Positions 1-61,850 of a DNA stretch of 64,000 nucleotides are shown here, one piece after another (positions within the stretch are counted from its first letter, which is position 1; every line of letters begins with the position of its first letter). This DNA comes from Anthoceros angustus (lineage: Eukaryota; Plantae; Anthocerotophyta). Both the position numbers and the translations under genes were made by a program. The stretch spans positions 558,001 to 622,000 of the forward strand of contig MU008191.1 of the NCBI GenBank assembly GCA_010909165.1. Reading direction: 5' to 3'. The notes below the pieces were generated by a model, which ran no database searches, was not told the DNA's origin, and saw only the letters and a list, made by a program, of their open reading frames with translations.

Positions 1-3000
1 GGGATGAATGTGCCCGAAAGTATCAGCTGGAGGTGCTGGGACAAGCTCAGGAGAAGAACACTATCGCCTTTCTTGAGACGGGGGCGGGTAAGACTCTCAT
101 AGCAGTTATGCTGATGAAGAGCAAGTATGAAATGATGCGACAGAATGGGGAGAAGATGCTGGCGGTGTTTCTCGTGCCGAAGGTGCCGTTGGTTTACCAG
201 GTACTGACTCTATGTGGAGGTGACGGAAGCTCGTAGAAAGGCTATGGATTAAGTTTGTTTTGCAGTTCTGGCCTGTTCAGGCAGAGGTGGTAACCAGATC
301 CGCGCACTTTTGTGTGCAGCAAGCAGAAGTGATTCGAGAAGGGACAGGTTTCAATGTGGGACACTACTGTGGAGAGATGGGTCAAGATTTCTGGGATCCA
401 AGAAGGTGGCAGCGGGAGTTTGAGACTAATGAAGTATGTAGATAATGGCGTTACTTACAATGTTGACTTTGATCTATTTCATGGCTTCTGTGTGTCTCAC
501 ACTTTCTTGTCATGACTTCAGGTCCTTGTAATGACTGCCCAAATTCTGCTGAACATCTTGAGGCATAGCATTGTCAGAATGGAATCCATCGATCTCCTTA
601 TCCTGGACGAGTGTCATCATGCTGTCAAAAAGCATCCTTACTCGTTGGTGATGTCTGAGTTCTACCACATGACCAGCAAAACGAAGAGGCCTGCAGTTTT
701 CGGCATGACAGCATCCCCAGTCAATTTGAAGGGTATGTGCATTTAACTTTGTACAGGTAACCATGTATAAGCAGAGGCCCTTTGACGACAGCGACATTTG
801 TCAATGCAGGCGTGTCCAACCAGGAAGATTGTGCTGTGAAGATTCGGAATCTGGAGAGCAAGCTTGATTCTATTGTGTGCACAATTAAGGACAGGAAGGA
901 ATTGGAGATGTACGTGCCAACACCGTCAGAAACTGTGGTAGAGTATGACAAGGCTGCTGTGTTATGGTCCTTACGTGAGCAGATTAAGAGTATGGAGTCT
1001 ACCGTTGAACAAGCAGCCAGTCAAAGCTCCAAACGAAGTAAGTGGAGATTCATGGGTGCTAGAGATGCTGGGTCAAAAGAGGAACTTCGTCTGGTGTATG
1101 GAGTTTCAGAGAGGACCGAGAGTGATGGTGCTGCGAGCTTGGGACAGAAGTTACGCGCTATCGTTTACGCTCTTGATGAGCTTGGCCAGTGGTGTGCATA
1201 CAAGGTAGATATTCTCAGGATTTCATTTTTGGATCATTAGCCTATGATCCTGTTGACCTCTCCCGATTGAAGTTGTTTCATCTATGCATGGCAGGTAGCC
1301 TTGTCATTTCTCACCGCCCTAAGAAATGATGAACGTGCGAATCATCAGCTCGATGTGAAATTCCAAGAGTCCTACCTGAAGAAGGTAGTTGACATCCTCA
1401 GATGCCGCCTTGCTGAAGGAGCTGTCGGGAGTAAACATGCAGGAGAACCAGAGGACGAGGATAAGGATAAGGGCTATGTTTTTGGTGAAGTTGAGGATGG
1501 CGAGCTTCCAGACATCCAAGGTTGGCAGCTTGGACGGTATCCAGTGTTACGATGACCCAGTGGACGTAGGTCATTCAGTTTGGTTCATGTGCTAACTTTT
1601 GTCCACAAAATTTGCAGCTGTTTCTGGGGGCGAGCATGTGGATGAGATTCTTGGAGCAGCCGTGGCAGGTGGCAGGGTAACACCAAAGGTGCAGGCCCTG
1701 ATTAAGATACTGCTAAGTTATCAACACACTGATGATTTTCGAGCTATCATATTTGTGGAGCGGGTCGTTGCTGCTTTGGTCCTTCCTAAGGTACAGGTCA
1801 AGCTGTGGCAGAATTATTGATCAACTGGGAAGTGGGAAGTGGCGTTATCTGTGTTTTTCTCTGTCTGAACGCTGTTCTGGTTGCAAAATCTCTTCTACAG
1901 GTTTTCGCTGAGTTGCCATCCTTGAAATTTGTCAAGTGCGCAAGTCTAATTGGGCACAACAATAATCAGGATATGAGGACGCGGCAAATGCAGGAGACAA
2001 TTTCGAAGTTTCGTGATGGAAGGGTGTGTGGTTTCTTATTTTCACTTCGTAGCGTTCCGTGTTTTATTTTGGGGATTGTTGCATGTTGTTTTAAGTATAA
2101 TTGCTCAGAGCATCGTGATGGGATACTAGTAACCCGTGACGGTGCCTGGTGGGTTGTTGCATGATGTTGCATGATGGGTTGTTGCATGATGGGGTTGTTG
2201 CATGACGTCGCAAGGACCTATCATGAAACATGACGGTGCAGTAACCCATAATGGCTGATTCCGTAACCCATCATGGTACCTGGTGGGTTGTTGCATGATG
2301 TTGCATGATGGGGTTGTTGCATGTTGTCGCAAGGACCCATCATGAAACATGAAGTTGCAATGACTCATTATGGGTTATTGCAACCCTTATCGGAGTACAA
2401 GTTTCTTTTGTTGACGCAGGAGACTCCTTTCTTGCTCTCAGCCCGCATCTGGCTGCCACGACTGTTGCCAGAGGGATGGACTCTGTCGAAGAAGTGAAAA
2501 TCTATGTATATTTTGGATGTACACCCAAATGTTCATCTGGGTGTATTGCCAAAATTAATGTAGATTTTCTACTGGCTGACGTCAAATGGAAGAAGTGCAA
2601 CCCACATCTCTGCTGATATCAAGGTGGCTATGTCATTTATAGGTTACGCTGCTCGTGGCCACAAGTGTTGCTGAAGAAGGTTTGGATATTCGGCAGTGCA
2701 ATGTGGTTATTCGGTTTGATCTAGCGAAGACTGTGCTTGCGTACATTCAGTCACGAGGTCGTGCCCGCAAGCCGGGTTCAGATTACATTCTGATGTTGGA
2801 GAAGTAAGCAAGAAGTTGAATGTTGTGGGAGTAATATCGCGTAGCATGTCATTATTTCACTCAAAGTGTTGGTACTTAAATGGTTGTTGGATGTCACAGA
2901 GGCAACTTGACTCACGAGGCTTTCCTGCGAAATGCTCGGAATAGTGAGGAAACCCTTCGCAAGGAAGCTGTTGAGAGGACAAGTCTTGACTTTAAAGCAT

Positions 3001-6000
3001 TTGAACCATCGGAACCGGATGGTGGTGATGTGTATCAAGTTCCTTCAACAGGTGCTACAGTCAGCCGGAATTCTGCGGTGGGGCTGATTCATTTCTATTG
3101 CTCGCAGCTGCCAAGTGACAGGTATTTGCTATCACTGTCCTGTGATGTCTTCCGACATGGTCATTTGGCAATCTTTTGGATCCGTTAGTCCTGTGCTTAG
3201 CTTACTTGTCTTTATTATTAGATACTCGATTCTGCGACCGGATTTTTTTATGACCCAAATTGACAAAGAAAATGGGGCTCCAAAATACTCCTGCAAGTTG
3301 CAGCTACCATGTAATGCGCCTATTGGAGTTATTGAGGGCCCAGTGTGCTCATCTATTCGAGGTGCTCAGCAGGTTGGACTGTGATGCACAACTGATTCTT
3401 CATGCTTCTCTGTTGTGTGACATAGCTCCCAGGTTCCAACTAACTCTGTGCTGCGGCAGGCCGTATGCCTTGAAGCATGTAAGAAGCTGCATGAGATGGG
3501 AGCATTTACAGACATGCTTTTACCGGATAAGGGGAGTGGTGGAGAAGCTGAAAAAATGGAAGAGGCGGAGGAAGGCGAACCTCTACCTGGAACGGCTCGT
3601 CACAGGGAATATTATCCTGAGGGAATTGCTGAGGTTCTAAGGGTGGGTGGCTAATGTGTTTGGTGTGCAATTGAGTGCGGAAGTCATGCGTGGTTTGCCA
3701 GTTTCAAGTGTTTATCATTATTGTTCTGTTTTAGGGGGATTGGATTCTTGGTGGGAAAGACCCTACAGAGACATGGTCACTATCTTTCTACAAGGTATCT
3801 TGCAAGAACATGGGTTTTTCTAGAGATCCTCTACTGACGGAAACATGTGACTTTGCGCTGCTGTTTGATAAAGAAGTGGATCCTGAGGTCAGTGTTACAA
3901 TTTTATAGTTGCATAGTTTTGTATGCTGGCGTCATGTCCTTAATGTCCAAGAAAGCCTTGAAGGGTAGTCTTGGCCACTATGCTTGATGCATTGGGCGAT
4001 GCTCTTTCCTTCGCTGAACTTGATGCATGTGAATGTCTTCCAGGTTTTGGCAATGTCAATGGATTTGTTTGTCTCGAGAACTATGACCACAAGGGCATCT
4101 CTCCATCACTGTGGTTCGCTGGAAGTTGATGCATCTCAGGTGATTGTCACCATTCCTTGCACCATATGTGATAGTGTTTTGAGTTCTGCCGTAAATCAAT
4201 TATTGGCCTTCATCTCTCCTCGGTGCACCTCTAGTTGGCCCCTGTTCAATGTACTAAGTTCAGATGTCTGTTTATGCTGTGTGCAGCTAGACAAGCTAAA
4301 GAGCTTTCATGTAAGGCTGATGAGTATTGTGCTCGACGTTGACGTTGAACCTGCAACAACCCCTTGGGATCCTGTGAAGGCCTATCTTTTTGTCCCCATT
4401 GTTCAAGGCACATCAGATGCAGATACTCTTGTCGATTGGAAATGTGTTGAGGAAACTCTTGACACGAAAGCCTGGTCCAATCCTTTACAAAGAGCCCGTC
4501 CAGATGTCTATCTTGGAACAGATGAGCGTGCCCTTGGTGGTGATCGCAGGGAATATGGATTCGGAAAACTGCGCCATGGCTATTCCCTTGGCCAGAAAGC
4601 CCATCCCACGTATGGAATACGTGGAGCTGTTGCAAAGTATGATACTGTAAAGGCATCAGGTCTTGTTCCTGGTCGAGATTCTGCGTCCATCATAGAGGAG
4701 TTAATTCCTGAGCCTGGCAAGCTGTGGATGGCAGACGGTGTGGCTGACATTGATTGCCTAGCTGGGAGAATTGTTACTGCGGTGCATTCTGGAAAGAGGT
4801 TTTATGTTGATTCTGTGAGGGTTGAGATGAATGCTAACAGTTCATTCCCAAGGAAGGAAGGATACTTGGGTCCTCTAGAATACAGCACTTACGGGGATTA
4901 TTACAAGCAAAAGTAACCATTTCTCTCCAGATGTTTGTGTTGTGCATTCCTACCCAGGCTTTATGCTTAGCTAGTTGCTCACTTTTCTTGCATCTGTAAT
5001 ACAGGTATGGTGTTGATCTTCGCTACAAAACTCAGGCTCTACTCAGGGGCAGAGGTGTTTCACATTGCAAGAACCTGCTGTCCCCTCGATTTGAGTCCAC
5101 CGATGGTAGGTTCTGGTCCCTGGAGATAGTTAAAAATATTTAAGCAAAAGTCTGTGTTGTTGATGCAACTAGTCTTTGTTAGAAATTGTTCTCTAACCAG
5201 ATACCCATGTACTGATGTTGTAAATTGACATCCAGGCAATGCTAACGGTGCTGATGAGCAGCTGGACAAGACATACTTCGTCATGTTGCCGCCAGAGTTG
5301 TGCCTTGTACACCCTTTGCCAGGTCCCTTAGTACGAGGTGCTCAGCGTCTGCCCTCCGTAATGAGAAGGGTCGAGAGTATGTTGCTGGCCATTCAGCTTA
5401 AGCACCAGATTGCCTACCCTATTCCAGCAGCCAAGGTGATAGTCCATTCCATTTTCTATAGGCTTGATGACTGTAAGACTGCTTGCATAGGTTAAGATCT
5501 TCATGGGCATGGAAGCTTGCTCCAAGTATTCGTCTGCTTCGGTTATGTGCAACTCTCTCATCATTTTACCACTTGCATATGCTCTCCTGTCATCAAGGTC
5601 TACCCAGGTTGAAAAGTTGAATTATTTGAGGTGACTCATGATGTATTACAGGTGTTGGAGGCGTTAACTGCAGCTTCATGCCAGGAGACTTTCTGTTATG
5701 AACGTGCTGAATTGTTGGGCGATGCATACCTGAAGTGGGTGGTCAGTCGTAGGCTGTTTCTGAAGTTTCCAAGTAAGCACGAGGGACAGCTCACACGTAT
5801 GCGACAGCAAACAGTTAGTAATTCAGTACTATATCAATTTGCCCTCGAGAAGGGGTTGCAGAGTTACATTCAGGCTGACCGTTTTGCTCCATCCCGTTGG
5901 GCTGCACCTGGGGTGCTCCCTGTCTTTGATGAGGACACTAAAGACCCAGATTGGTCGGCTCCTCCGGTTCCTGAGGAGGTGCAAGAGGTTGACAAGATGG

Positions 6001-7650
6001 AGACAGAGGATGGTGAAATGGTTCATCATCAGCAAAAAGATACGATCAAGGTGGTCGGTGTGGAGAATGGTGACATTCAGGAAATTGAGGACGATTCAGA
6101 AGCTATGGAGGATGGAGAGATAGAGGGGGATTCTAGTTCATATCGGGTGCTTTCAAGCAAAACACTGGCTGATGTTGTAGAGGCGCTTATTGGGATCTAT
6201 TATGTTGAGGGTGGCCAACAAGCTGCAACACATGTGATGAACTGGATTGGGATACCAGTGGATTTTGATGAAACTGATAGCCAGAAAGCAAGGGCTGGTT
6301 CTATTGTACCAGAGACGGTGGCCCGAAGCATAGACTTTGATGGGCTACAGGCTGCCATCGGTTACCCATTCCGCGAGAAGAGTCTCCTCGTCGAAGCAAT
6401 AACACATGCCTCTCGGCCATCCTCAGGGGTGCCATGTTATCAGCGATTAGAGTTTGTCGGGGATGCTGTATTAGACCATCTGATCACTCGTCATCTCTTC
6501 TTCAGCTATACAGACCTTCCCCCAGGTCGGCTGACAGACCTGCGAGCGGCTGCGGTCAATAATGAGAATTTTGCCCGTGTCACCGTAAAGAACAAGCTTC
6601 ACGTGCATTTACGGCATGGGTCCAGTGCTTTGGAGACTCAGGTGAACTCATGTTGCTTTCTATATTGCCTGATGCATTTTCTGACAGAATGTTTGAAATC
6701 CTTGTCCGCCCTGCACTTAAAATTGCGAGGTAATCTTGTTTCCATATGTGTGCTTGTTTCTGCTTCAGATCCGAGATTTTGTTAAGGATATCCAAAGTGA
6801 ATTAGACAAGCCCGGAGTTAATTCATTTGGGCTGGGTGACTTCAAAGCGCCGAAGGTACTTGGGGATATTCTGGAGTCAGTCGCCGGAGCAATCTTCCTT
6901 GACAATGGCCTTGACACAGACGTTGTGTGGAAGGTGTCCCTCTTACCTGTTGGTATTGTTATCTGCCTTCAGCTCTGTTTTCCCTCTTGCTAACTGCCTT
7001 TTGTACAGGTTTTTGAACCCCTCCTACAACCCATGGTGACTCCGGAGACACTACCCATGCACCCTGTCCGAGAGCTGCAGGAACGTTGCCAGCAACAAGC
7101 CGAGGGTCTGGAGTACAAGGCAACCCGTGAAGGTAATGTGGCCACAGTTGAGGTGTATGTGGATGGAGTGCAAATCGGCATAGCACAGAACCCTCAGAAG
7201 AAAATGGCCCAAAAGCTGGCTGCAAGAAATGCCTTGGCCATACTGAAGGAAAAGGAACTGAACGAGGCGGAAGCGGAGAAGGCTGCTGCCGCCGAATCAG
7301 GGAAGACAACGAAAACCCCTGTTTTCACCAGGCAGACGTTGAACGACATCTGCCTCCGACGGCAGTGGCCCATGCCTCAGTACAAGTAAGCATCACAACT
7401 CCCGAACTTCTCCTTCGACTGACTGCTCTTAGTACACTCCACATCTCCTAATGCCGCCTATGATAACGCGCTGTGCAGATGCGTGACTGAAGGTGGTCCG
7501 GCACACGCCAAGAGGTTCACTTACTCTGTTCGTGTGCACACAACTGAGCAAGGGTGGACTGAAGAGTACGTGGGCGAGCCCATGCCCAGTGTGAAGAAGG
7601 CGAAGGATTCAGCCGCGGTCATCTTGTTGCAGCATTTGAAACGGCGGTGA
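1..7650 (+). CDS. DCL1: DICER-LIKE 1, multi-exon, 5' part outside window. Domains: DExH helicase, dimerisation/DUF283, PAZ, 2x RNase III, 2x dsRBD
   Basis: Helicase motifs LETGAGKT and LILDECHH; [16 protein letters not shown] in exon 2643-2802; PAZ-region [33 protein letters not shown]; RNase IIIa [13 protein letters not shown]; RNase IIIb [13 protein letters not shown]; dsRBDs [12 protein letters not shown] and [22 protein letters not shown] introns join in frame; stop TGA at 7648-7650. Two dsRBDs plus the DCL1-specific segments identify the DCL1 clade. Confidence 0.97.
2129..2386. repeat. Diverged tandem duplication (period ~134 bp) built from GGGTTGTTGCATGAT sub-repeats, inside DCL1 intron 2024-2642
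   Basis: Units start GTAACCC at 2129 and 2263. Both contain CCTGGTGGGTTGTTGCATGATGTTGCATGATGGG and GTCGCAAGGACC(T/C)ATCATGAAACATGA. Confidence 0.9.
2493..2573 (+). ncRNA. Candidate intronic pre-miRNA hairpin in DCL1 intron 7
   Basis: Positions 2496-2530 pair with 2535-2569 with no bulge: 30 of 35 paired (3 G:U), 5 mismatches, 4-nt loop. A 21/21-nt duplex (2511-2531 / 2536-2556) with 2-nt 3' overhangs sits 15 nt above the stem base. Confidence 0.7.
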
Positions 7651-8171
7651 TCGGACTCACATTTATCAACCCTATCCATTTTTCCTGCATTCTTGTGCTC
7701 TACAGCTAATCCAGCTGTCGACGTCGAAAATTTTCTTAGGCTAGGTAATGAGATGCCTCAAAGCTGGAGCATCGGATCGATCATTTTGGTCTTCGACAGC
7801 CCCAAATTGGTGCGACTTTAAACGACTTAATATTACTTGCTGGACGCGTCGAGGACCATTGCGACTACGTATCTTTGTTGTCTTATGGTAATAAAGAAAC
7901 CCTGGTTGAAATCTCAGTAGGATGACGCTCCAGGCAATGCTGGCCAGACAAAAGCCTATCCACTTAGAAGGTAAAACCCAACCCCCGAAGTGCCAGGATG
8001 TCAGCTGAAGCTTGAAACCCTGGCACTTGGATCGGCGTACTCGCGGCAATCCATCCATCTGCGGTTCGATCTTGCGTCGTTGCCGTTTTGGAACAGGTGT
8101 CCTTGATGCAGGTTGGAATTGTGGGAGCAGCTCTGGCGTAGCTGCAGTGGAAGGATCTTGGCCGTGTGGGG

Positions 8172-9051
8172 ATGGCAGGCGTGGTGGCCGCTCAGCCGTG
8201 CGTGGCCCTTGCGCGCGGGAGCCTTCAGTCTTCGTCCGCAGGCATTCAGCAGCGCGGGCAACTTTGCGGCCAGGGTTTGGCAATAGGTGCGTCTGAGGGG
8301 AGCAGCAGGGGCCGGAGATGGCAGCCGCTGAAGGTCAGGGCGGAGGGGTCCGGACTGTCCAAGCAGCAGGGAGGGCGGTGGCTTAGCTGCACCACCAGGC
8401 ATGTGCGCCTATTTGCCGGTGAGCTTAATCCCGAGACCAGAATACTGGACCAGTCCGATGAGAAACTCGGCAAGCTGTCCCTCATCCTGGATCCCGACAA
8501 CGAGTTCGTCTGGCCCGAGGATAAGGAGCAACAGGTGTACGCGTACTTCACAGAGCTGGTGGACAACTATGCTGTGAGTCACCTGCTCCGAAAAACCCTG
8601 TTGCTTTGCTTCCGTATCCTAAACTACATGTCTACAGGGTCGTGTGCTGTCAACGGTGATTGTGTTTCACTTGTCCTCCCCCGTTGAGTATCCTGCTTCC
8701 TTGTATCGGTTCCCCAGCAACCTTACTTCTGTTTCATGTATTTCCGTTTGTCCCAAACAGGGAGAGTGATCATGAAAGGAGCTGTGTGCCCCCTCAAGTC
8801 GTCCTTGATTTTTCTTGATCCCTAACTTGCCGTGGAGATCCCAAGTATCTCCAACTCACGACTCCCTGATTTTCTTGCAGGGTGCGGATCTGACGGAGTA
8901 CACTCTCCGGCTGATAGGCTCAGACATCGAGCACTACATCCGCGGCATGCTGCTCAAGAACGAGATCAAGTACAACCTAAACTGCCGAGTGCTTAACTTC
9001 AGCATGGGCCGGCCCCGCATCGAAGGCCTGGATGTGGAGGACGAGGAGTGA
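8172..9051 (+). CDS. NDHM: Chloroplast NAD(P)H-quinone oxidoreductase (NDH) subunit M; 2 exons (8172-8573, 8881-9051)
   Basis: Transit-peptide-like N-terminus, then CTTRHVRLF...LDPDNEFVW...ELVDNYA|GADLTEYTLRLIGSDIEHYIR...YNLNCRVLNFSMGRPRI, matching NdhM. Phase-0 GT-AG intron 8574-8880. Confidence 0.95.
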
Positions 9052-11073
9052 CAAGACAGTCCACTCCGCCTCCGGTTTGTTCCACCTTGAAACAAGAAGA
9101 ACCACCCTTGCAACCTTCCTAAGCAGGTGGTCCCTTCAGCCACGGTGTATGTAACACATTCTTCCCTTTGTACAGTACTTGCACAGTAAAACCATGCCGA
9201 AGGACGCAAGCTTTGCTCAAACCCTAGCCCTAAGCGCTCCGCCCGGGAAGTTCACGTTGCATCTCTCCGTGACCAACCTCCTTTTCCACCCGCACGGCGG
9301 AGAGTACTGCTAACCTCGAACTCCCTCCAACCTCCCAAGACGAATCCTTTTCCATCTCCCTCGTTCCTCCTAAGAGGGCGCAGCAATATCACAGCAAATA
9401 CGGCAAATACGCACTGTCGTCTCCATCCCCGCCCGGCAGCAAGCAACAGACGACGAAGCACCACCTGAGAACGCACCGAGCCGGTCCAGAAGCTTCCCGA
9501 CTGCAACTGCGGGATCAACCTCGCCAACACCAAGACGGACTGTGCCTAAGCAGGATCAAGGAAAGCACAGGCTTGCTATTGCGGTACACTGGGAGTCGGC
9601 CGGGCCCAGAGGCTGAGAGGCTGGCTGTGGATGCAAGTGGCAGGCCCGGAAGCCGGAAGCGGGGCCTCATGTATCACGGGCCGCAGGTACCGCCTGCCCA
9701 GTAGAGTTGGAGCCGGGCGGTCGGCGACAGGCATTGGCTGGCATACCGGGCGGGCGTGTCGGCACCAGGGGACGGTGGCTCGCTGCTTGCCGCTCTGCCG
9801 TACTTTCGTGCCACAGCGTACCGACTTTTATTACTCCTGCTGTCCTGCAGTTCATCAAGTTGCTGCCACGCCATTCCTATCTGCAGGCAACTACAACTGC
9901 TACCGTCACGCCTCCACTCACACCTCCACTTGGAAGGAAAGGGAAGTGTGCATGTTGCATGTAAATAATATGTATGTCCATTCCCTGCTCCCTGCTCCCT
10001 GCTTCCTGCTTTGCATCTCTTCACATGAGGAAGACCCATGTCTCAAGTTGTACCACATGTTTTTTTGTTTGGTGTGATGCAATTGATAATATGGGGTCTG
10101 GTCTGATTTGGGGGGGATGGGAGGAGAAGAGGAGGGTGGTGAAGGGAAAGAGAGCATCGAGCGTATGAGTCAAAAGCAGCATTCCCAAGAATGAAGTATT
10201 GGATACCGCGTACAAAATGCTTGATTCAAAGGATTGCATGCTTTCCATGCCCGTCGTGCAGCTCACAGCCCGCGGTGGAGTAGAGGGTCACGGTGGGCAA
10301 ATATAGGCAACCCCAGCCACATGCCCGGGCTGGGCTGGGTTTAGGGAATCGAGGTTCGAGGAAGGAGAGGAGACGAGAAGCGAAGAGAAGAGAAGAAAAT
10401 CGAGTCGGCTTCGTGGAAGAAGGTCCCCGCCCGCCGCCTTCTGAAATCCCTGCGCGCGCCACACTCTCTCTGCGTGTCTGTAGCGGGACATCGGGGGAAA
10501 AAGGAATTTCACTCTCTCCTGGCTTCCGTTGGCTTTCCGTTCCCCATCTTCCCCTTCTGGCCTTGGGTGGCGGGATTGTCGTTGGTTCGTTCCTTCTTCT
10601 GCCATCCTTCCTCTCCTTTCTCCCGCGCCTCCCACTGTGCATGTCGGTTGCCTCGCTCTTTTGGGTTCCTTCCGTTCCCTTCCCTTCCCTGCCCCTCAGT
10701 TTCTTCCTTCACTTCCCGGCTCTGTTATAAGGTCTCGGGCGCGAGGCAGAGCTCGGGCAATCGCTTGGTGTGAGTGGGAGCAGCTGTGCATTCTGCGACC
10801 CCGCTGTCGCTGCTGTTGTTGGGCTTTGATGGTAAGGCATTGCAGGAGACCTTGTCTGCTGGGACACGGCCTGGTGCGGCTAAGATTGAGGCTCATGAAT
10901 TGAGAGGAGCAGAGCAGAAAGGGGCGGCTAAGATTGAGCCTCATGAATTGAGAGAGGAGGAGAGGCAGTAAGGGGCAAGGGAGGAGGAAGGTTCTGTGGA
11001 TGTCTTGCTGCGAAAATTGAGCCTGGGAGAGGAAGGGAAGGGGAGCGCCAATCTGCGACAGCGGGAGTTCAGC

Positions 11074-11478
11074 ATGGGTGCGGGCGGGGACGGTAAGAAA
11101 TACGGCGAGACGGAGGAGTTTCAAGACTTCCTGCCCATCATGGCGCAGAAGCTGAGCGAGCAGGAGTTCTTGGAGGAGCTCTGCAACGGCTTCCGCCTGC
11201 TGGCGGATCCCCGCTCCGGGACCATCACCTTCTCCAGCTTGAAGAAGAACGCCAAATGGCTGGGGCTGGAGGGAATGACGGATGCGGAGCTCAAGACTAT
11301 GATTCAGGAGGGGGATACGGACGGGGACGGCGCGCTCAACGAGCACGAATTCTGCGTGTTGATGATCAGGACCAGCCCCACGCTCCTGTCCCAGGCGCAG
11401 GACCTGCTGGACGATGCTCTGCAAGAAGAGCTGGCGGACTTCATGGACTTGGATGACTCCTCCTACAGGCTCTCGTGA
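11074..11478 (+). CDS. KIC/PBP1-like calcium-binding EF-hand protein, intronless
   Basis: FQDFLPIMAQKL...EELCNGFRLLADP...TITFSSLKKN...MIQEGDTDGDGALNEHEFCVLMIRTSP, typical of the KIC/PBP1 family. First ATG at 11074; the open frame extends to 10996. Confidence 0.9.
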   Translation: MGAGGDGKKYGETEEFQDFLPIMAQKLSEQEFLEELCNGFRLLADPRSGTITFSSLKKNAKWLGLEGMTDAELKTMIQEGDTDGDGALNEHEFCVLMIRTSPTLLSQAQDLLDDALQEELADFMDLDDSSYRLS

Positions 11479-12699
11479 GCGCTGCTTGGCAGTGCCTGTT
11501 GCTGCTTTCTTTTACCTTGCATGAGTGCTGTATTTCATTGTAGCTATACCATATCAGTGATCTCGCGAGAGGAGAGTGTTGTAGGAGCTGGGCTCGTGGG
11601 GAAGCCCCGCGCTTGCAAGCCGCCTTATGAAGGACAGCAAGGCCGGCGATGGCAGAATGGGATCGTCACCGGCTCTTGCGCTACCCGTAGCTGAAGGCTG
11701 TAGTGCTGGGAAGTGAGAAGAGTGGATCACATTGATGGGTTCTTCACTGTGAAGAACACATCAGGCGGAGGAAATGCTGCGTGAGAGTAGATCTTGATCC
11801 GAGTGCGTTTGTTGGGTGAGATCTTTTTTTGCTCGTCATCAAGAAGAACGCTGCATCGCTATTTTCTCGTAACCGCTCTCTTTTGTTGCTGGAGATGCCG
11901 TTTCTCGCTTATAACGTAAATGGTCTTAACAATTGGGGTGATTCCCATGTGACAAGCCAATTGTACGACGTCGCACTTTATTCTCCCAATTCTTCACGTC
12001 ACACAAGAGCAGTGGATACACAAACACGTCTAGCCCTCTTTTGCGCCTGCGGAATCGTCCTTAAGTCGTCGTCACCACCAGTAGCAAGGCTTGCCCGAGT
12101 GAAGTGATGGCAGCGACAGAAAGTGTACCTAAGCTATGATGAAGCTCGTCTGGAAAGCACCTCGCGAGCGGTCATGAATGCCGCCCACCTTCCCCTGGCA
12201 TGCAGCACACATGCACAAAGTAATTTGTACCGTCCTCTCTTCCATTTGCCTTCAGTCTCCCACAATTTCCTCCTGTCAATCCCTTTCCACCACTGGACAC
12301 AGTTGAGGTGCTAGATGATATGGAAATTGTCTTTGCTTGACATCTTGGTCATTTCCCCGTCGTCTGCCACAAAGGGGAGGTAAGAATCACAGATGGATTC
12401 CGCACCCGTCCAAGCCGTAGAGTCCTGTCACCACGCCTGGAGCGTGTCTTATGGTGGGACCCTGCTGCCATTGCACCCTGCTTCACGCCAATCTGCTACT
12501 TCCCGGTACAGACTACAGTCCGTAGTACAACACTAGATCTCACCTTTTATCTCTTTCCCATGTTGGTAGCAAGTATATTACTATCAGAGGGAGAGCATGC
12601 TGGGGTGCAAGCCTAAAGCAGGAGCGGCTCGCCATTACCCGTGTCATACATCTGCTTCCGCAGCAGATGACATCAATTATGGCGTGACCCTTCGAAGTT

Positions 12700-16152: not shown

Positions 16153-16506
16153 TTATCGATGGAATAACATGATTTTTTATACGTAAGGAGGATGTGTGTC
16201 CATTTGGCCCAAGCCATTTGGACACACATTTATAAGAACGCTGTGATTAAGCATCCTGAGCGTAAGGAGGATGTGTGTCCATTTGGCCTAAGCTATTTGG
16301 ACACACGTTTATAAGAAAGCTATGATTAAGAAAGCTATGATTAAGCATCTTGAGCTTAGATGGGTACTTAGATAGGGTGCCTAAAGGGAGTGGATGCCCT
16401 TGGTGCAAATAGCTTAGGCACACCATGGAACAAGTTGTTAAGTACCAAGTCCCACGAGGGAAATCCGTCCTTAGTGGACTTAAATAAAATTCTTCTTCTT
16501 CTTCTT
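16153..16506 (+). mobile_element. Non-LTR retroposed element (SINE or 3' end of an RTE-like LINE) with (TTC)n tail, copy 1
   Basis: Ends ...GTGGACTTAAATAAAA(TTC)6. Flanked by CATCCCA at 16146-16152 and 16507-16513 (7-bp TSD). Internal ~80-bp duplication. Homologous to 31340-31555 and 54025-54113. Confidence 0.75.
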
Positions 16507-60556: not shown

Positions 60557-61850
60557 TGTAAGGGTATTAAAGCCCAATGTACTTAGACTAATATGCTTAG
60601 TCTAAGTTAGGTGTCAATTTAGTATCATTAGTTTAGCTAACGCTAATCACTAGGAAGCTTCTTGCGCGGTTTCCTAGGGTCTTCTTGTGGACCTTCCTAA
60701 GGAGCCCTGCTGGAGGGTATATATACCCCCAGAGCCCTCATTTCAATGAGAGAGATACATTTGCTTCCTCCTCTCCTCTCCTCTTTCCACCATCATGGGC
60801 TGCCACACGATCCTTCAACTGGTATCAGAGCTTTGGTCTGGTTGTGTTGTGATGCTAGACGATTCTAGCTTCTAGCGGCGCAGCCGTGGAATGCGGTGAT
60901 CCATATCGCGGCAGCGCAACGCCGCGGAGGCCGTGAGCGGGCGAGGCCGTGAGCGGGCGAGGCCGTGAGCGGGCGAGGCCGCGAACGCGCAAGGCCTCCC
61001 GGGCGCCTGCAGAGCCTGCGGACGCTGCACGGCGGAGGCCGTGAGCGGGCGAGGCCGTGAGCGGGCGAGGCCGCGGCGTCAGCGGACACGGCGGCGGCGT
61101 CAGCGGACACGGCGGCGGCCGTGAGCGGGCGAGGCCGCGGCGGCGTCAGCGGACACGGCGGCGGCCGTGGCGGGGCAGGCCGTGGCGGGGCAGGCCGTGG
61201 CGGGGCAGGCCGTGAGCGGGCGAGGCCGTGAGCGGGCGAGGCCGTGAGCGGGCGAGGCCGTGAGCGGGCGAGGCCGTGAGCGGGCGAGGCCGTGGCGGGG
61301 CAGGCCGTGAGCGGGCGAGGCCGTGAGCGGGCGAGGCCGTGGCGGGGCAGGCCGTGGCGGGGCAGGCCGTGAGCGGGCGAGGCCGTGAGCGGGCGAGGCC
61401 GTGAGCGGGCGAGGCCGTGAGCGGGCGAGGCCGTGGCGCCCAAGAACCCAGTACCAAAATAATCGCGGTGCCGGGCGGCGAAGTAAAATTCGCCAAAATA
61501 TTCTAATACTAAGGGAATGTAACTAATACACTCAGTCAGATGACTTTATTTCTTTTTTTAACTTTTCTGACAAGGCGAGTCGAGTGTTTTATCTGTATTG
61601 TTTTTTGAATCATGATGTTTTCATCATCAAAAAACGTCATGTTCAATATTGAGAAGTTAGATGGTACTAACTTCCCGTTTTGGAAAGAACAAGTGTATAA
61701 TGTTCTAGTGCAGAAAAAGTAGATCAAGCCCATAAAGCTGTTACGCGTCAAACCAGATAGTATGACACAGGATGAGTGGCAGGACCTGGATGAGCTTGCT
61801 AGATCTATTATCATGCTAACATTGTCAAAATTGTACTTCAATGTGAGATA
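60557..61850 (+). mobile_element. Decayed Ty1/copia (Tnt1-like) element: 5' LTR, PBS, leader and gag remnant
   Basis: LTR TG...CA at ~60557-60817 with TATATATA; iMet-tRNA PBS TGGTATCAGAGC at 60820-60831; gag MFNIEKLDGTNFPFWKEQVYNVLVQKK*IKP...KPDSMTQDEWQDLDELARSIIMLTLS from 61639 with an internal stop. No pol or 3' LTR seen. Confidence 0.9.
60929..61437. repeat. GC-rich minisatellite of 16-bp and 15-bp variant units in the copia leader
   Basis: Units GGCCGTGAGCGGGCGA (16 bp) and GGCCGTGGCGGGGCA (15 bp) interspersed, plus GGCGTCAGCGGACACGGCGGC variants. Confidence 0.97.

What the first reader, a model, noticed from the sequence alone, without database searches (positions are those of the whole stretch)
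2493..2573. Pre-miRNA-like hairpin inside intron 7 of DCL1: candidate Dicer autoregulatory intronic MIRNA
Seen: intron 2024-2642 (619 nt) is the seventh and by far the longest visible DCL1 intron. Its 3' part folds into an unbulged stem in which 2496-2530 pairs with 2535-2569 (30/35 paired, 3 G:U, two 2-nt and one 1-nt symmetric mismatches, GUUC loop). A duplex of UUUUGGAUGUACACCCAAAUG (2511-2531) and UCUGGGUGUAUUGCCAAAAUU (2536-2556) would have 2-nt 3' overhangs, both strands starting with U, 15 nt above the stem base. Established: DCL1 base-to-loop processing cuts ~15-17 nt above the lower-stem base; Arabidopsis DCL1 carries MIR838 in intron 14 and Physcomitrium DCL1a carries MIR1047 in intron 7, where hairpin cleavage competes with splicing. 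Inference: this is a lineage-specific (not a sequence I recognise) DCL1 feedback hairpin, in a gene that also lacks the miR162 site. The intron number assumes no intron upstream of the window.
Basis: partly seen in the sequence, partly recalled or inferred. Interest (0 to 1): 0.9.

Follow-up and report, generated by a model that had tools for sequence, protein, structure and literature searches.

The report
Conserved hairpin in Dicer gene intron
The plant gene for the enzyme that makes microRNAs (DCL1) carries, in one oversized intron, a stable hairpin shaped like a microRNA precursor and conserved in related species; it probably lets the enzyme cut its own unfinished message, as already shown in a moss and in Arabidopsis, but no small-RNA data could be reached to prove it.

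Summary
Positions 2493-2573 form an imperfect 35-38 bp stem (-39.6 kcal/mol, z -6.8). It lies in the sense strand of a GT..AG intron (2024-2642, 619 nt; the other 18 introns are 75-216 nt) of a DCL1-type Dicer gene.

- **Intron number:** all 19 visible introns match the 19 introns of an angiosperm DCL1, so this is ancestral intron 7. That is the intron number reported for ppt-MIR1047 in Physcomitrium DCL1a.
- **Splicing:** RNA-run contigs confirm the splice.
- **Intron RNA:** intron-7 RNA is present in four RNA runs.
- **Conservation:** close relatives keep 2479-2671 at no more than 2.6-3.6% divergence, against about 11% just upstream.
- **Copies and families:** there is no second copy in the window and no Rfam match.
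- **Further hairpins:** two more sense-strand hairpins lie in the same intron. The three are the top three of a GC-normalised fold scan of all 64 kb.

Not shown: small RNAs, cleavage, and homology to MIR1047. No miRNA-Seq run was listed and no MIR1047 sequence could be reached.

The organism is probably a hornwort. That is a lead from other notes and is only circumstantially supported here.

Verdict: a credible but unproven new member of the known class of DCL1 intronic feedback hairpins. The scan had not noted this locus before.

The parts
3..7650 (+). DCL1-type Dicer gene; the N-terminus lies upstream of the window. 20 visible exons, 1678 aa read without a stop.
   Evidence: Exon model; Pfam RNase III x2, PAZ, dsrm, DND1_DSRM; 72% identical to Erythranthe DCL1, with all 19 intron positions shared.
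1901..2023 (+). Exon 7 (ends ...KFRDGR)
   Evidence: spliced to 2643 in RNA contigs.
2024..2642 (+). Intron 7: GT..AG, phase 0, 619 nt (other introns 75-216 nt).
   Evidence: The joint 2022/2023 to 2642/2643 is seen in runs X1, X2 and X6; intron contigs are present in all four runs.
2149..2250 (+). Hairpin A, built of GGGTTGTTGCATGATG units paired with CCCATCATGAAACATGA.
   Evidence: In the 2140-2260 fold: -52.7 kcal/mol on + against -32.9 on -. Scan rank 2, z -4.56.
2276..2400 (+). Hairpin B, a tandem duplicate of A, with sub-hairpins 2296-2350 and 2354-2385.
   Evidence: -55.4 kcal/mol on + against -36.4 on -. Scan rank 1, z -4.96. Direct repeats D2 and D3.
2484..2581 (+). Hairpin C with its basal 5-bp helix and 4x3 internal loop.
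   Evidence: -39.4 kcal/mol.
2493..2573 (+). Hairpin C core (the finding): 33 bp in the fold, 10-nt loop that can close to GUUC.
   Evidence: The minus strand folds 5.8 kcal/mol worse.
2511..2531 (+). Candidate 5p small RNA (structural proposal only).
   Evidence: Duplex with 2536-2556 has 2-nt 3' overhangs, 3 symmetric mismatches and no bulge. No reads were available.
2536..2556 (+). Candidate 3p small RNA (structural proposal only).
   Evidence: As above. No complementary site elsewhere in the window or in the visible coding sequence.
2643..2803 (+). Exon 8 ([15 protein letters not shown]..., helicase C)

Best explanation
Hairpin C (2493-2573) is a microRNA-precursor-like substrate embedded in the sense strand of intron 7 of the plant's own DCL1 gene. 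On the unspliced transcript the DCL1 complex can cut the stem about 15-18 nt above its base, releasing a ~21-nt duplex (candidates 2511-2531 and 2536-2556). That cut severs the pre-mRNA before exons 7 and 8 are joined, so high DCL1 activity lowers the output of full-length DCL1 mRNA. This is a cis-acting negative feedback of the kind described for ath-MIR838 (intron 14) and shown experimentally for ppt-MIR1047 (intron 7). Shown here: the structure, its strand, its place in ancestral intron 7, the size of the intron, the presence of intron-containing RNA, and sequence conservation in relatives. Inferred: dicing, the small RNAs, and the feedback.
For: - Strong imperfect stem, z -6.83, kept in the whole-intron fold; MFEI 1.38.
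- The duplex geometry meets the structural MIRNA criteria: 3 symmetric mismatches, no bulge, 2-nt overhangs, foldback under 300 nt.
- The sense strand folds better than the antisense strand (-39.6 against -33.8).
- The host is DCL1 and the intron is ancestral intron 7; all 19 of 19 intron positions are shared with Erythranthe DCL1.
- It is the one oversized intron: 619 nt against 75-216 nt.
- Contigs of related organisms differ from the window at 19 of 168 positions in 2311-2478, but at no more than 5 (X2) or 7 (X6) of 193 positions in 2479-2671, with no indel there (Fisher p 0.001 and 0.01).
- Intron-7 contigs occur in all four RNA runs at roughly 10-50% of the exon or junction depth, while the part of intron 6 that was laid (1800-1900) has none.
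- No other copy in 64 kb.
- Method control: a Logan genomic contig of another plant's DCL1 (L083) has a z -8.4 hairpin in an enlarged intron 14 that matches Rfam MIR838 at E 9e-5, below that family's gathering score.
- Literature: PMC11799827, PMC10721683, PMC3565333, PMC4429486.
Against: - No small-RNA evidence at all: no miRNA-Seq run was listed, and Logan contigs cannot show 21-nt RNAs or cleavage ends.
- The terminal loop left between the proposed strands is only 4 nt, which is unusually tight.
- The positions of the few substitutions inside the hairpin were not reported, so no compensatory change could be scored. That the unlisted differences lie beyond 2478 is itself an inference from table order and k-mer share.
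- Conservation of 2574-2671 could partly reflect splice signals and the exon.
- Genome-wide copy number is unknown.
Confidence: 0.42

Rival explanations
1. A structured intron element that tunes splicing or intron retention without being diced. Hairpins A, B and C, together with the eight UGCAUG motifs, would slow or regulate removal of intron 7. Retention gives an early stop codon, so DCL1 output is tuned by retention and decay rather than by Dicer cleavage.
For: All three top-ranked folds of the 64 kb lie in this one intron, and all on the sense strand. There are 8 UGCAUG against 0.37 expected. Intron-7 contigs are present at a sizeable fraction of exon depth in four runs, while the laid part of intron 6 has none. 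Reading into the intron hits a stop by about 2160.
Against: No known plant factor is tied to these motifs here. The A/B repeat region is the fast-evolving, indel-prone part in relatives, while C is the conserved part. C has the specific size and mismatch pattern of a DCL1 substrate. Contig depth is a poor measure of retention.
Confidence: 0.2
2. A neutral inverted repeat: a relic of a small foldback or MITE-like insertion, or of a local inverted duplication, that inflated the intron and has no function.
For: The 5p arm is itself partly palindromic. The same intron holds unstable minisatellite repeats. Other strong palindromic hairpins exist in the window, for example 16190-16310. The conservation contrast rests on few substitutions between close relatives.
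Against: No second copy at up to 3 mismatches or by blastn in 64 kb. No flanking direct duplication is visible. It is unrelated to the 16.2-kb palindrome. It is 3-4 times less diverged than the adjacent intron and free of indels in relatives. G:U pairs favour the sense strand.
Confidence: 0.2
3. A hairpin-derived siRNA source processed imprecisely, possibly by DCL4 or DCL3 type enzymes rather than DCL1. It would give heterogeneous small RNAs with no dedicated feedback role.
For: Young plant hairpins often start this way. Hairpins A and B are long, repeat-derived stems.
Against: Stem C is only about 38 nt per arm, room for a single 21-nt duplex above a ~15-18 nt lower stem, which is the DCL1 base-to-loop layout. 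No read data either way.
Confidence: 0.1

Closest known systems
ppt-MIR1047 in intron 7 of Physcomitrium patens DCL1a (Axtell 2007; Arif 2022, as cited in PMC11799827, PMC10721683, PMC3565333)
   Same: A sense-strand hairpin inside a DCL1 intron with the same reported intron number (7). Because the window's 19 introns match an angiosperm's one for one, the moss intron 7 is very probably the same ancestral intron. The proposed mechanism is also the same: hairpin processing competes with splicing.
   Different: Sequence relationship is untested, because no MIR1047 sequence could be reached. Reviews list miR1047 neither among families shared by Anthoceros and Physcomitrium (PMC9291395) nor among the conserved miRNAs of A. 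angustus (PMC7027989). Small RNAs and a deletion phenotype are shown for MIR1047; nothing of that kind is shown here.
ath-MIR838 in intron 14 of Arabidopsis DCL1 (Rfam RF03974)
   Same: An intronic DCL1 hairpin in an enlarged intron. A relative was recovered here as a control (L083 intron 14: 284 nt, z -8.4, MIR838 E 9e-5).
   Different: A different intron: the window's intron 14 is 92 nt with no hairpin. No Rfam MIR838 match in the window. The MIR838 stem is longer, about 55 bp.
miR162 targeting of DCL1 mRNA (angiosperms)
   Same: Negative feedback on DCL1 by the miRNA pathway.
   Different: miR162 acts in trans on a site at the exon 12/13 junction. No such site exists in the visible coding sequence (best penalty score 10, miR162 sequence from memory). 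The candidate small RNAs here have no site in the visible DCL1 exons.
Drosha cleavage of hairpins in the DGCR8 mRNA (animal Microprocessor autoregulation; from general knowledge)
   Same: The processing enzyme cuts a hairpin in the transcript of its own complex and so limits its own production.
   Different: That case involves animal proteins and hairpins in the 5' UTR and coding region rather than an intron. It is evolutionarily unrelated.

Membership tests
Plant MIRNA locus (Axtell & Meyers 2018 criteria, from general knowledge) | Single foldback under 300 nt, with no secondary stems or large loops inside the miR/miR* duplex | tested here: met
   81-nt single stem-loop; the duplex region has only symmetric 1-2 nt mismatches.
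Plant MIRNA locus (Axtell & Meyers 2018 criteria, from general knowledge) | miR/miR* duplex with at most 5 mismatched positions, at most 3 of them in asymmetric bulges, and 2-nt 3' overhangs | tested here: met
   For 2511-2531 with 2536-2556: 3 mismatched positions (2517, 2518, 2528), none asymmetric, 2-nt overhangs. This is structural only; the strands are proposals.
Plant MIRNA locus (Axtell & Meyers 2018 criteria, from general knowledge) | Both miR and miR* seen in small-RNA sequencing with at least 75% precision, in replicated libraries, 20-24 nt | not testable with these tools
   No miRNA-Seq run was listed. All listed runs are Logan contigs, which cannot hold 21-nt reads.
DCL1 intronic feedback hairpin (MIR838 / MIR1047 class) | Hairpin lies in an intron of the DCL1 orthologue, in sense orientation | tested here: met
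   the sense strand folds better.
DCL1 intronic feedback hairpin (MIR838 / MIR1047 class) | Truncated DCL1 transcripts ending or starting at the hairpin cut sites | tested here: inconclusive
   Contigs show intron-containing RNA but carry no end information. No 'begin/end' pile-ups were reported (table 6).
DCL1 intronic feedback hairpin (MIR838 / MIR1047 class) | Removing the hairpin raises DCL1 mRNA or alters miRNA levels | not testable with these tools
   Needs an experiment.
MIR1047 family (sequence homology) | Recognisable similarity of the mature or precursor sequence to ppt-MIR1047 | not tested
   No MIR1047 sequence was obtainable: full-text sequence search blank, supplements blank or not held, no Rfam hit of any kind. 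Only the intron number coincides (plus the literature).
MIR838 family (Rfam RF03974) | Match to the covariance model | tested here: not met
   No MIR838 hit in window 1-12000 at E up to 10, whereas L083 intron 14 hits at E 9e-5.
MITE / foldback transposon | Multiple dispersed copies, terminal inverted repeats flanked by a target-site duplication | tested here: inconclusive
   No other copy in 64 kb, no flanking direct repeat seen, and the orthologous position is conserved in relatives. Genome-wide copy number could not be checked.

The most novel reading that the evidence does not exclude
DCL1 intron 7 has carried a Dicer-substrate hairpin since the common ancestor of mosses and hornworts. On this reading the hairpin is the hornwort counterpart of ppt-MIR1047: the same ancestral intron and the same job, with the sequence turned over beyond recognition. 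Splicing-versus-dicing autoregulation of DCL1 would then be an ancient bryophyte trait rather than a moss novelty. A weaker form is also notable: independent lineages repeatedly recruit the very same one of 19 introns.
Probability: 0.12. Interest if true: 0.8.

Novelty: new member of a known kind. Interest (0 to 1): 0.55.

Why it matters
DCL1 dosage sets the output of the whole microRNA pathway. Two lineages are known to place a DCL1 substrate inside a DCL1 intron: Arabidopsis (MIR838, intron 14) and Physcomitrium (MIR1047, intron 7; deleting it causes salt hypersensitivity). A third case in a probable hornwort, in the same ancestral intron as the moss, would have one of two meanings. Either the circuit is much older than thought, or it evolves again and again at a favoured site. 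It would also give a directly testable target in a transformable hornwort model. The published reviews I could read list no miRNA-based DCL1 control for hornworts.

Tried and rejected
- **Rfam, window 1-12000 at E up to 10:** only chance-level hits (mir-2012 at E 5.9 over the stem; mir-592 over hairpin A).
- **Small-RNA runs:** none was listed.
- **MIR1047 sequence:** full-text search with arm sequences and supplement searches were blank or not held. Arif 2022 and Axtell 2007 are not held.
- **Hornwort miRNA lists:** the arms are absent from the held supplements of PMC7027989 and PMC8075897. The A. angustus novel-miRNA file is on DRYAD.
- **Orthologous introns through proteins:** the only full-length DCL1 representative was a Lamiaceae-type protein, so the follow-up search listed only flowering-plant DCL1 proteins. 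A mixed alignment of exon pieces was scrambled by MAFFT and was not used. Translating the intron ORF 2353-2613 as a handle found nothing.
- **Metagenome scan with the exon 8 peptide:** it gave only distant plants. L004 has an 88-nt intron 7. L003 is cut 135 nt upstream of exon 8.
- **Organism identity:** two ORFs are not on record. A YccV-like ORF has its best named hit at 50% identity, in a lycophyte, so the plant is not close to Physcomitrium. 'Hornwort' rests on other agents' notes plus circumstantial fit.
- **Targets of the candidate small RNAs:** none in the window or in the visible coding sequence.
- **Similarity to the palindrome at 16.2 kb:** none.
- **The search of earlier findings by sequence:** blank.

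Full report
**1.

Folded as RNA, 2480-2585 gives one stem-loop of -39.6 kcal/mol. Shuffles average -18.3, z is -6.83, and none of 200 shuffles folds as well.

Pair by pair, 2496-2530 faces 2535-2569 with 30 of 35 positions paired. Three are G:U. Symmetric mismatches lie at 2508-2509, 2517-2518 and 2528.

The fold adds three base pairs at the bottom (2493-2495 with 2571-2573, one bulged U). After a 4x3 internal loop it adds a 5-bp helix, 2484-2488 with 2577-2581. The 81-nt core has MFEI 1.38.

The stem is kept when the whole 619-nt intron is folded. The antisense strand folds 5.8 kcal/mol worse, because the G:U pairs become A-C mismatches there.

**2. The host gene and the intron**

I built a 20-exon model for 3-7650, corrected at exons 17 and 18. 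It reads 1678 aa without a stop and is 72% identical to Erythranthe guttata DCL1. Pfam finds two RNase III domains, PAZ, dsrm and the DCL1-type second dsRBD.

All 19 introns are GT..AG. Intron 7 (2024-2642) is 619 nt; the rest are 75-216 nt.

I mapped the Erythranthe protein onto its own genomic locus (L002) and compared it with my model. All 19 window introns sit at the same protein positions as the 19 Erythranthe introns. Erythranthe exon 1 runs from residue 1 to the point where the window's first visible intron lies.

This is ancestral land-plant intron 7, between ...KFRDGR and VTLLVATS.... In Erythranthe that intron is under 80 nt. In two other plant DCL1 contigs it is 88 nt (L004) and 92 nt (L083).

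**3. Not a repeat within reach, not a known RNA family**

Neither arm recurs in the 64 kb at up to 3 mismatches. A sensitive blastn of the whole intron against the window finds only chance-sized matches. No target-site-like direct repeat flanks the stem.

Rfam 15 gives nothing meaningful at E up to 10. Rfam does contain MIR838, so a relationship to that family is excluded at this sensitivity. I could not establish whether Rfam holds a MIR1047 model.

**4. The intron holds three exceptional hairpins, not one**

I folded every 100-nt window of the 64 kb on both strands (12,782 folds) and normalised for GC content. The three best non-overlapping windows are 2291-2390, 2151-2250 and 2481-2580, all on the + strand and all in this intron.

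The first two (A, about 2149-2250; B, about 2276-2400) are tandem duplicates built from a GGGTTGTTGCATGATG minisatellite pairing with CCCATCATGAAACATGA. They fold at -52.7 and -55.4 kcal/mol in the sense strand, against -32.9 and -36.4 in the antisense strand. They carry 8 UGCAUG motifs where 0.37 are expected. Their meaning is open.

**5. Evidence from public RNA runs (one call allowed, contigs only)**

*Same organism (X1).*
- Run X1 matches the window perfectly and shows the spliced joint 2022/2023 to 2642/2643.
- It also has intron contigs at 2028-2246 and 2351-2671, at about 10-16% of exon depth.

*Close relatives (X2, X6, X10; other organism labels).*
- X2 and X6 show the same splice, and they hold intron contigs at depths comparable to their junction contigs.
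- The part of intron 6 that was laid (1800-1900) has zero depth in all four runs. This argues against plain DNA contamination, although the tool warns that holes prove nothing.
- The relatives differ from the window at 19 (X2) or 17 (X6) listed positions between 2311 and 2478. They have indels of 16, 11 and 2 nt in the repeat part.
- From 2479 to 2671 the contig totals leave room for at most 5 (X2) or 7 (X6) substitutions, and no indel is reported there.
- The X10 contig (2427-2592) has three differences before 2479 and at most one after.
- Fisher tests on the worst case give p = 0.001 and p = 0.01.

*Caveat.* The difference table was cut at 40 rows and ends at 2478. That the nine unlisted rows lie beyond 2478 is my inference, from the ordering, from the per-type counts, and from the low shared-word fraction (0.15-0.17). 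If it is wrong, the hairpin is even better conserved. Because the positions are hidden, I could not look for compensatory changes.

**6. What could not be shown**

No miRNA-Seq run was listed for the hairpin. Assembled contigs cannot reveal 21-nt RNAs or cleavage ends. So dicing, the identity of the mature strands, and any feedback all remain inference.

The candidate strands have no complementary site elsewhere in the window or in the visible DCL1 coding sequence. Any feedback would therefore act in cis, by cutting the pre-mRNA, not by targeting the mRNA. There is also no miR162-type site (miR162 sequence from memory).

**7. A control for the approach**

A fragment returned by the protein search led to a 12-kb Logan genomic contig of another plant's DCL1 (L083). 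Its intron 7 is 92 nt. Its intron 14 is enlarged to 284 nt and holds a -60.3 kcal/mol hairpin, z -8.4. That hairpin matches Rfam MIR838 at E 9e-5, below that family's gathering score.

So the same procedure recovers what looks like a diverged relative of the known DCL1 intronic MIRNA, in the intron where it is expected. The signature is the same: one swollen intron and one outstanding sense-strand stem.

**8. Which organism**

The tools hide it. Two window ORFs are not on record. A YccV-like ORF finds its best named relative at only 50% identity, in a lycophyte, so this is not a close relative of Physcomitrium.

Notes by other agents on the same genome call it a probable hornwort, citing hornwort-type DYW:KP editing factors. 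I did not verify that.

It does fit the short introns and the roughly 50% GC. It also fits the Anthoceros angustus paper, which deposited one transcriptome run in 2019 (PMC7027989), and run X1 is dated 2019. That paper reports 180 novel miRNAs whose list I could not reach. The arms are not in the held supplements of either Anthoceros genome paper.

**9. Comparison with what is known**

The literature I could read says the following.
- MIR1047 lies in intron 7 of PpDCL1a.
- Its processing competes with splicing, and its deletion raises PpDCL1a expression and causes salt hypersensitivity (PMC11799827, PMC10721683, citing Arif 2022).
- MIR838 lies in AtDCL1 intron 14.
- The two are regarded as independent inventions (PMC3565333, PMC4429486).
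- Reviews do not list miR1047 among families shared by Anthoceros and Physcomitrium (PMC9291395).

The present hairpin is therefore best filed as a candidate third member of this functional class. The coincidence of intron number with the moss is striking, given 19 introns to choose from. It could mean deep homology with sequence turnover, or convergence on a favoured intron. I rate deep homology at about 0.12.

**10. Verdict**

I put 0.42 on the dicing-feedback mechanism. The rest is split between a splicing or retention element, a neutral inverted repeat, and an imprecise siRNA hairpin.

Noticed in passing
window 2149-2250 and 2276-2400 (+): Two further very stable sense-strand hairpins in the same intron. 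They are built from a GGGTTGTTGCATGATG minisatellite, carry 8 UGCAUG motifs, and fold about 20 kcal/mol better in sense than in antisense. Relatives show 16-nt and 11-nt indels here.
   Followed up: partly
window 3-7650 vs L002: All 19 visible introns of this DCL1 lie at the same protein positions as the 19 introns of Erythranthe guttata DCL1. The gene structure appears frozen since the land-plant ancestor.
   Followed up: yes
L083:8094-8377 (Logan SRR33705257 contig): Another plant's DCL1 has an enlarged intron 14 with a -60.3 kcal/mol hairpin (z -8.4). It matches Rfam MIR838 at E 9e-5, far below the gathering score, so it is probably a diverged MIR838 orthologue.
   Followed up: partly
window 16190-16310 (-): A nested palindromic hairpin (-56.9 kcal/mol, z -10.3) made of repeated GTGTGTCCAAATGGC-type units. 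It is unrelated in sequence to the DCL1 hairpin.
   Followed up: partly
window 60920-61440: A GC-rich (80-87%) 16-nt minisatellite, (GGCCGTGAGCGGGCGA)n with variants. It dominates the raw folding-energy ranking.
   Followed up: no
window 1985-2025 (run X10): Run X10 also holds a 3.8-kb contig of a clearly diverged DCL1 spliced at the same exon 7/8 junction. It is either a second organism in that sample or a paralogue.
   Followed up: no
window 6230-6301 (+): A weak snoR118 (C/D box) hit, E 0.83, well below the gathering score and inside coding exon 17. Probably chance.
   Followed up: no
window 2672-2900: All laid contigs stop at 2671 and depth is zero beyond it, even over exon 8.
   Followed up: no
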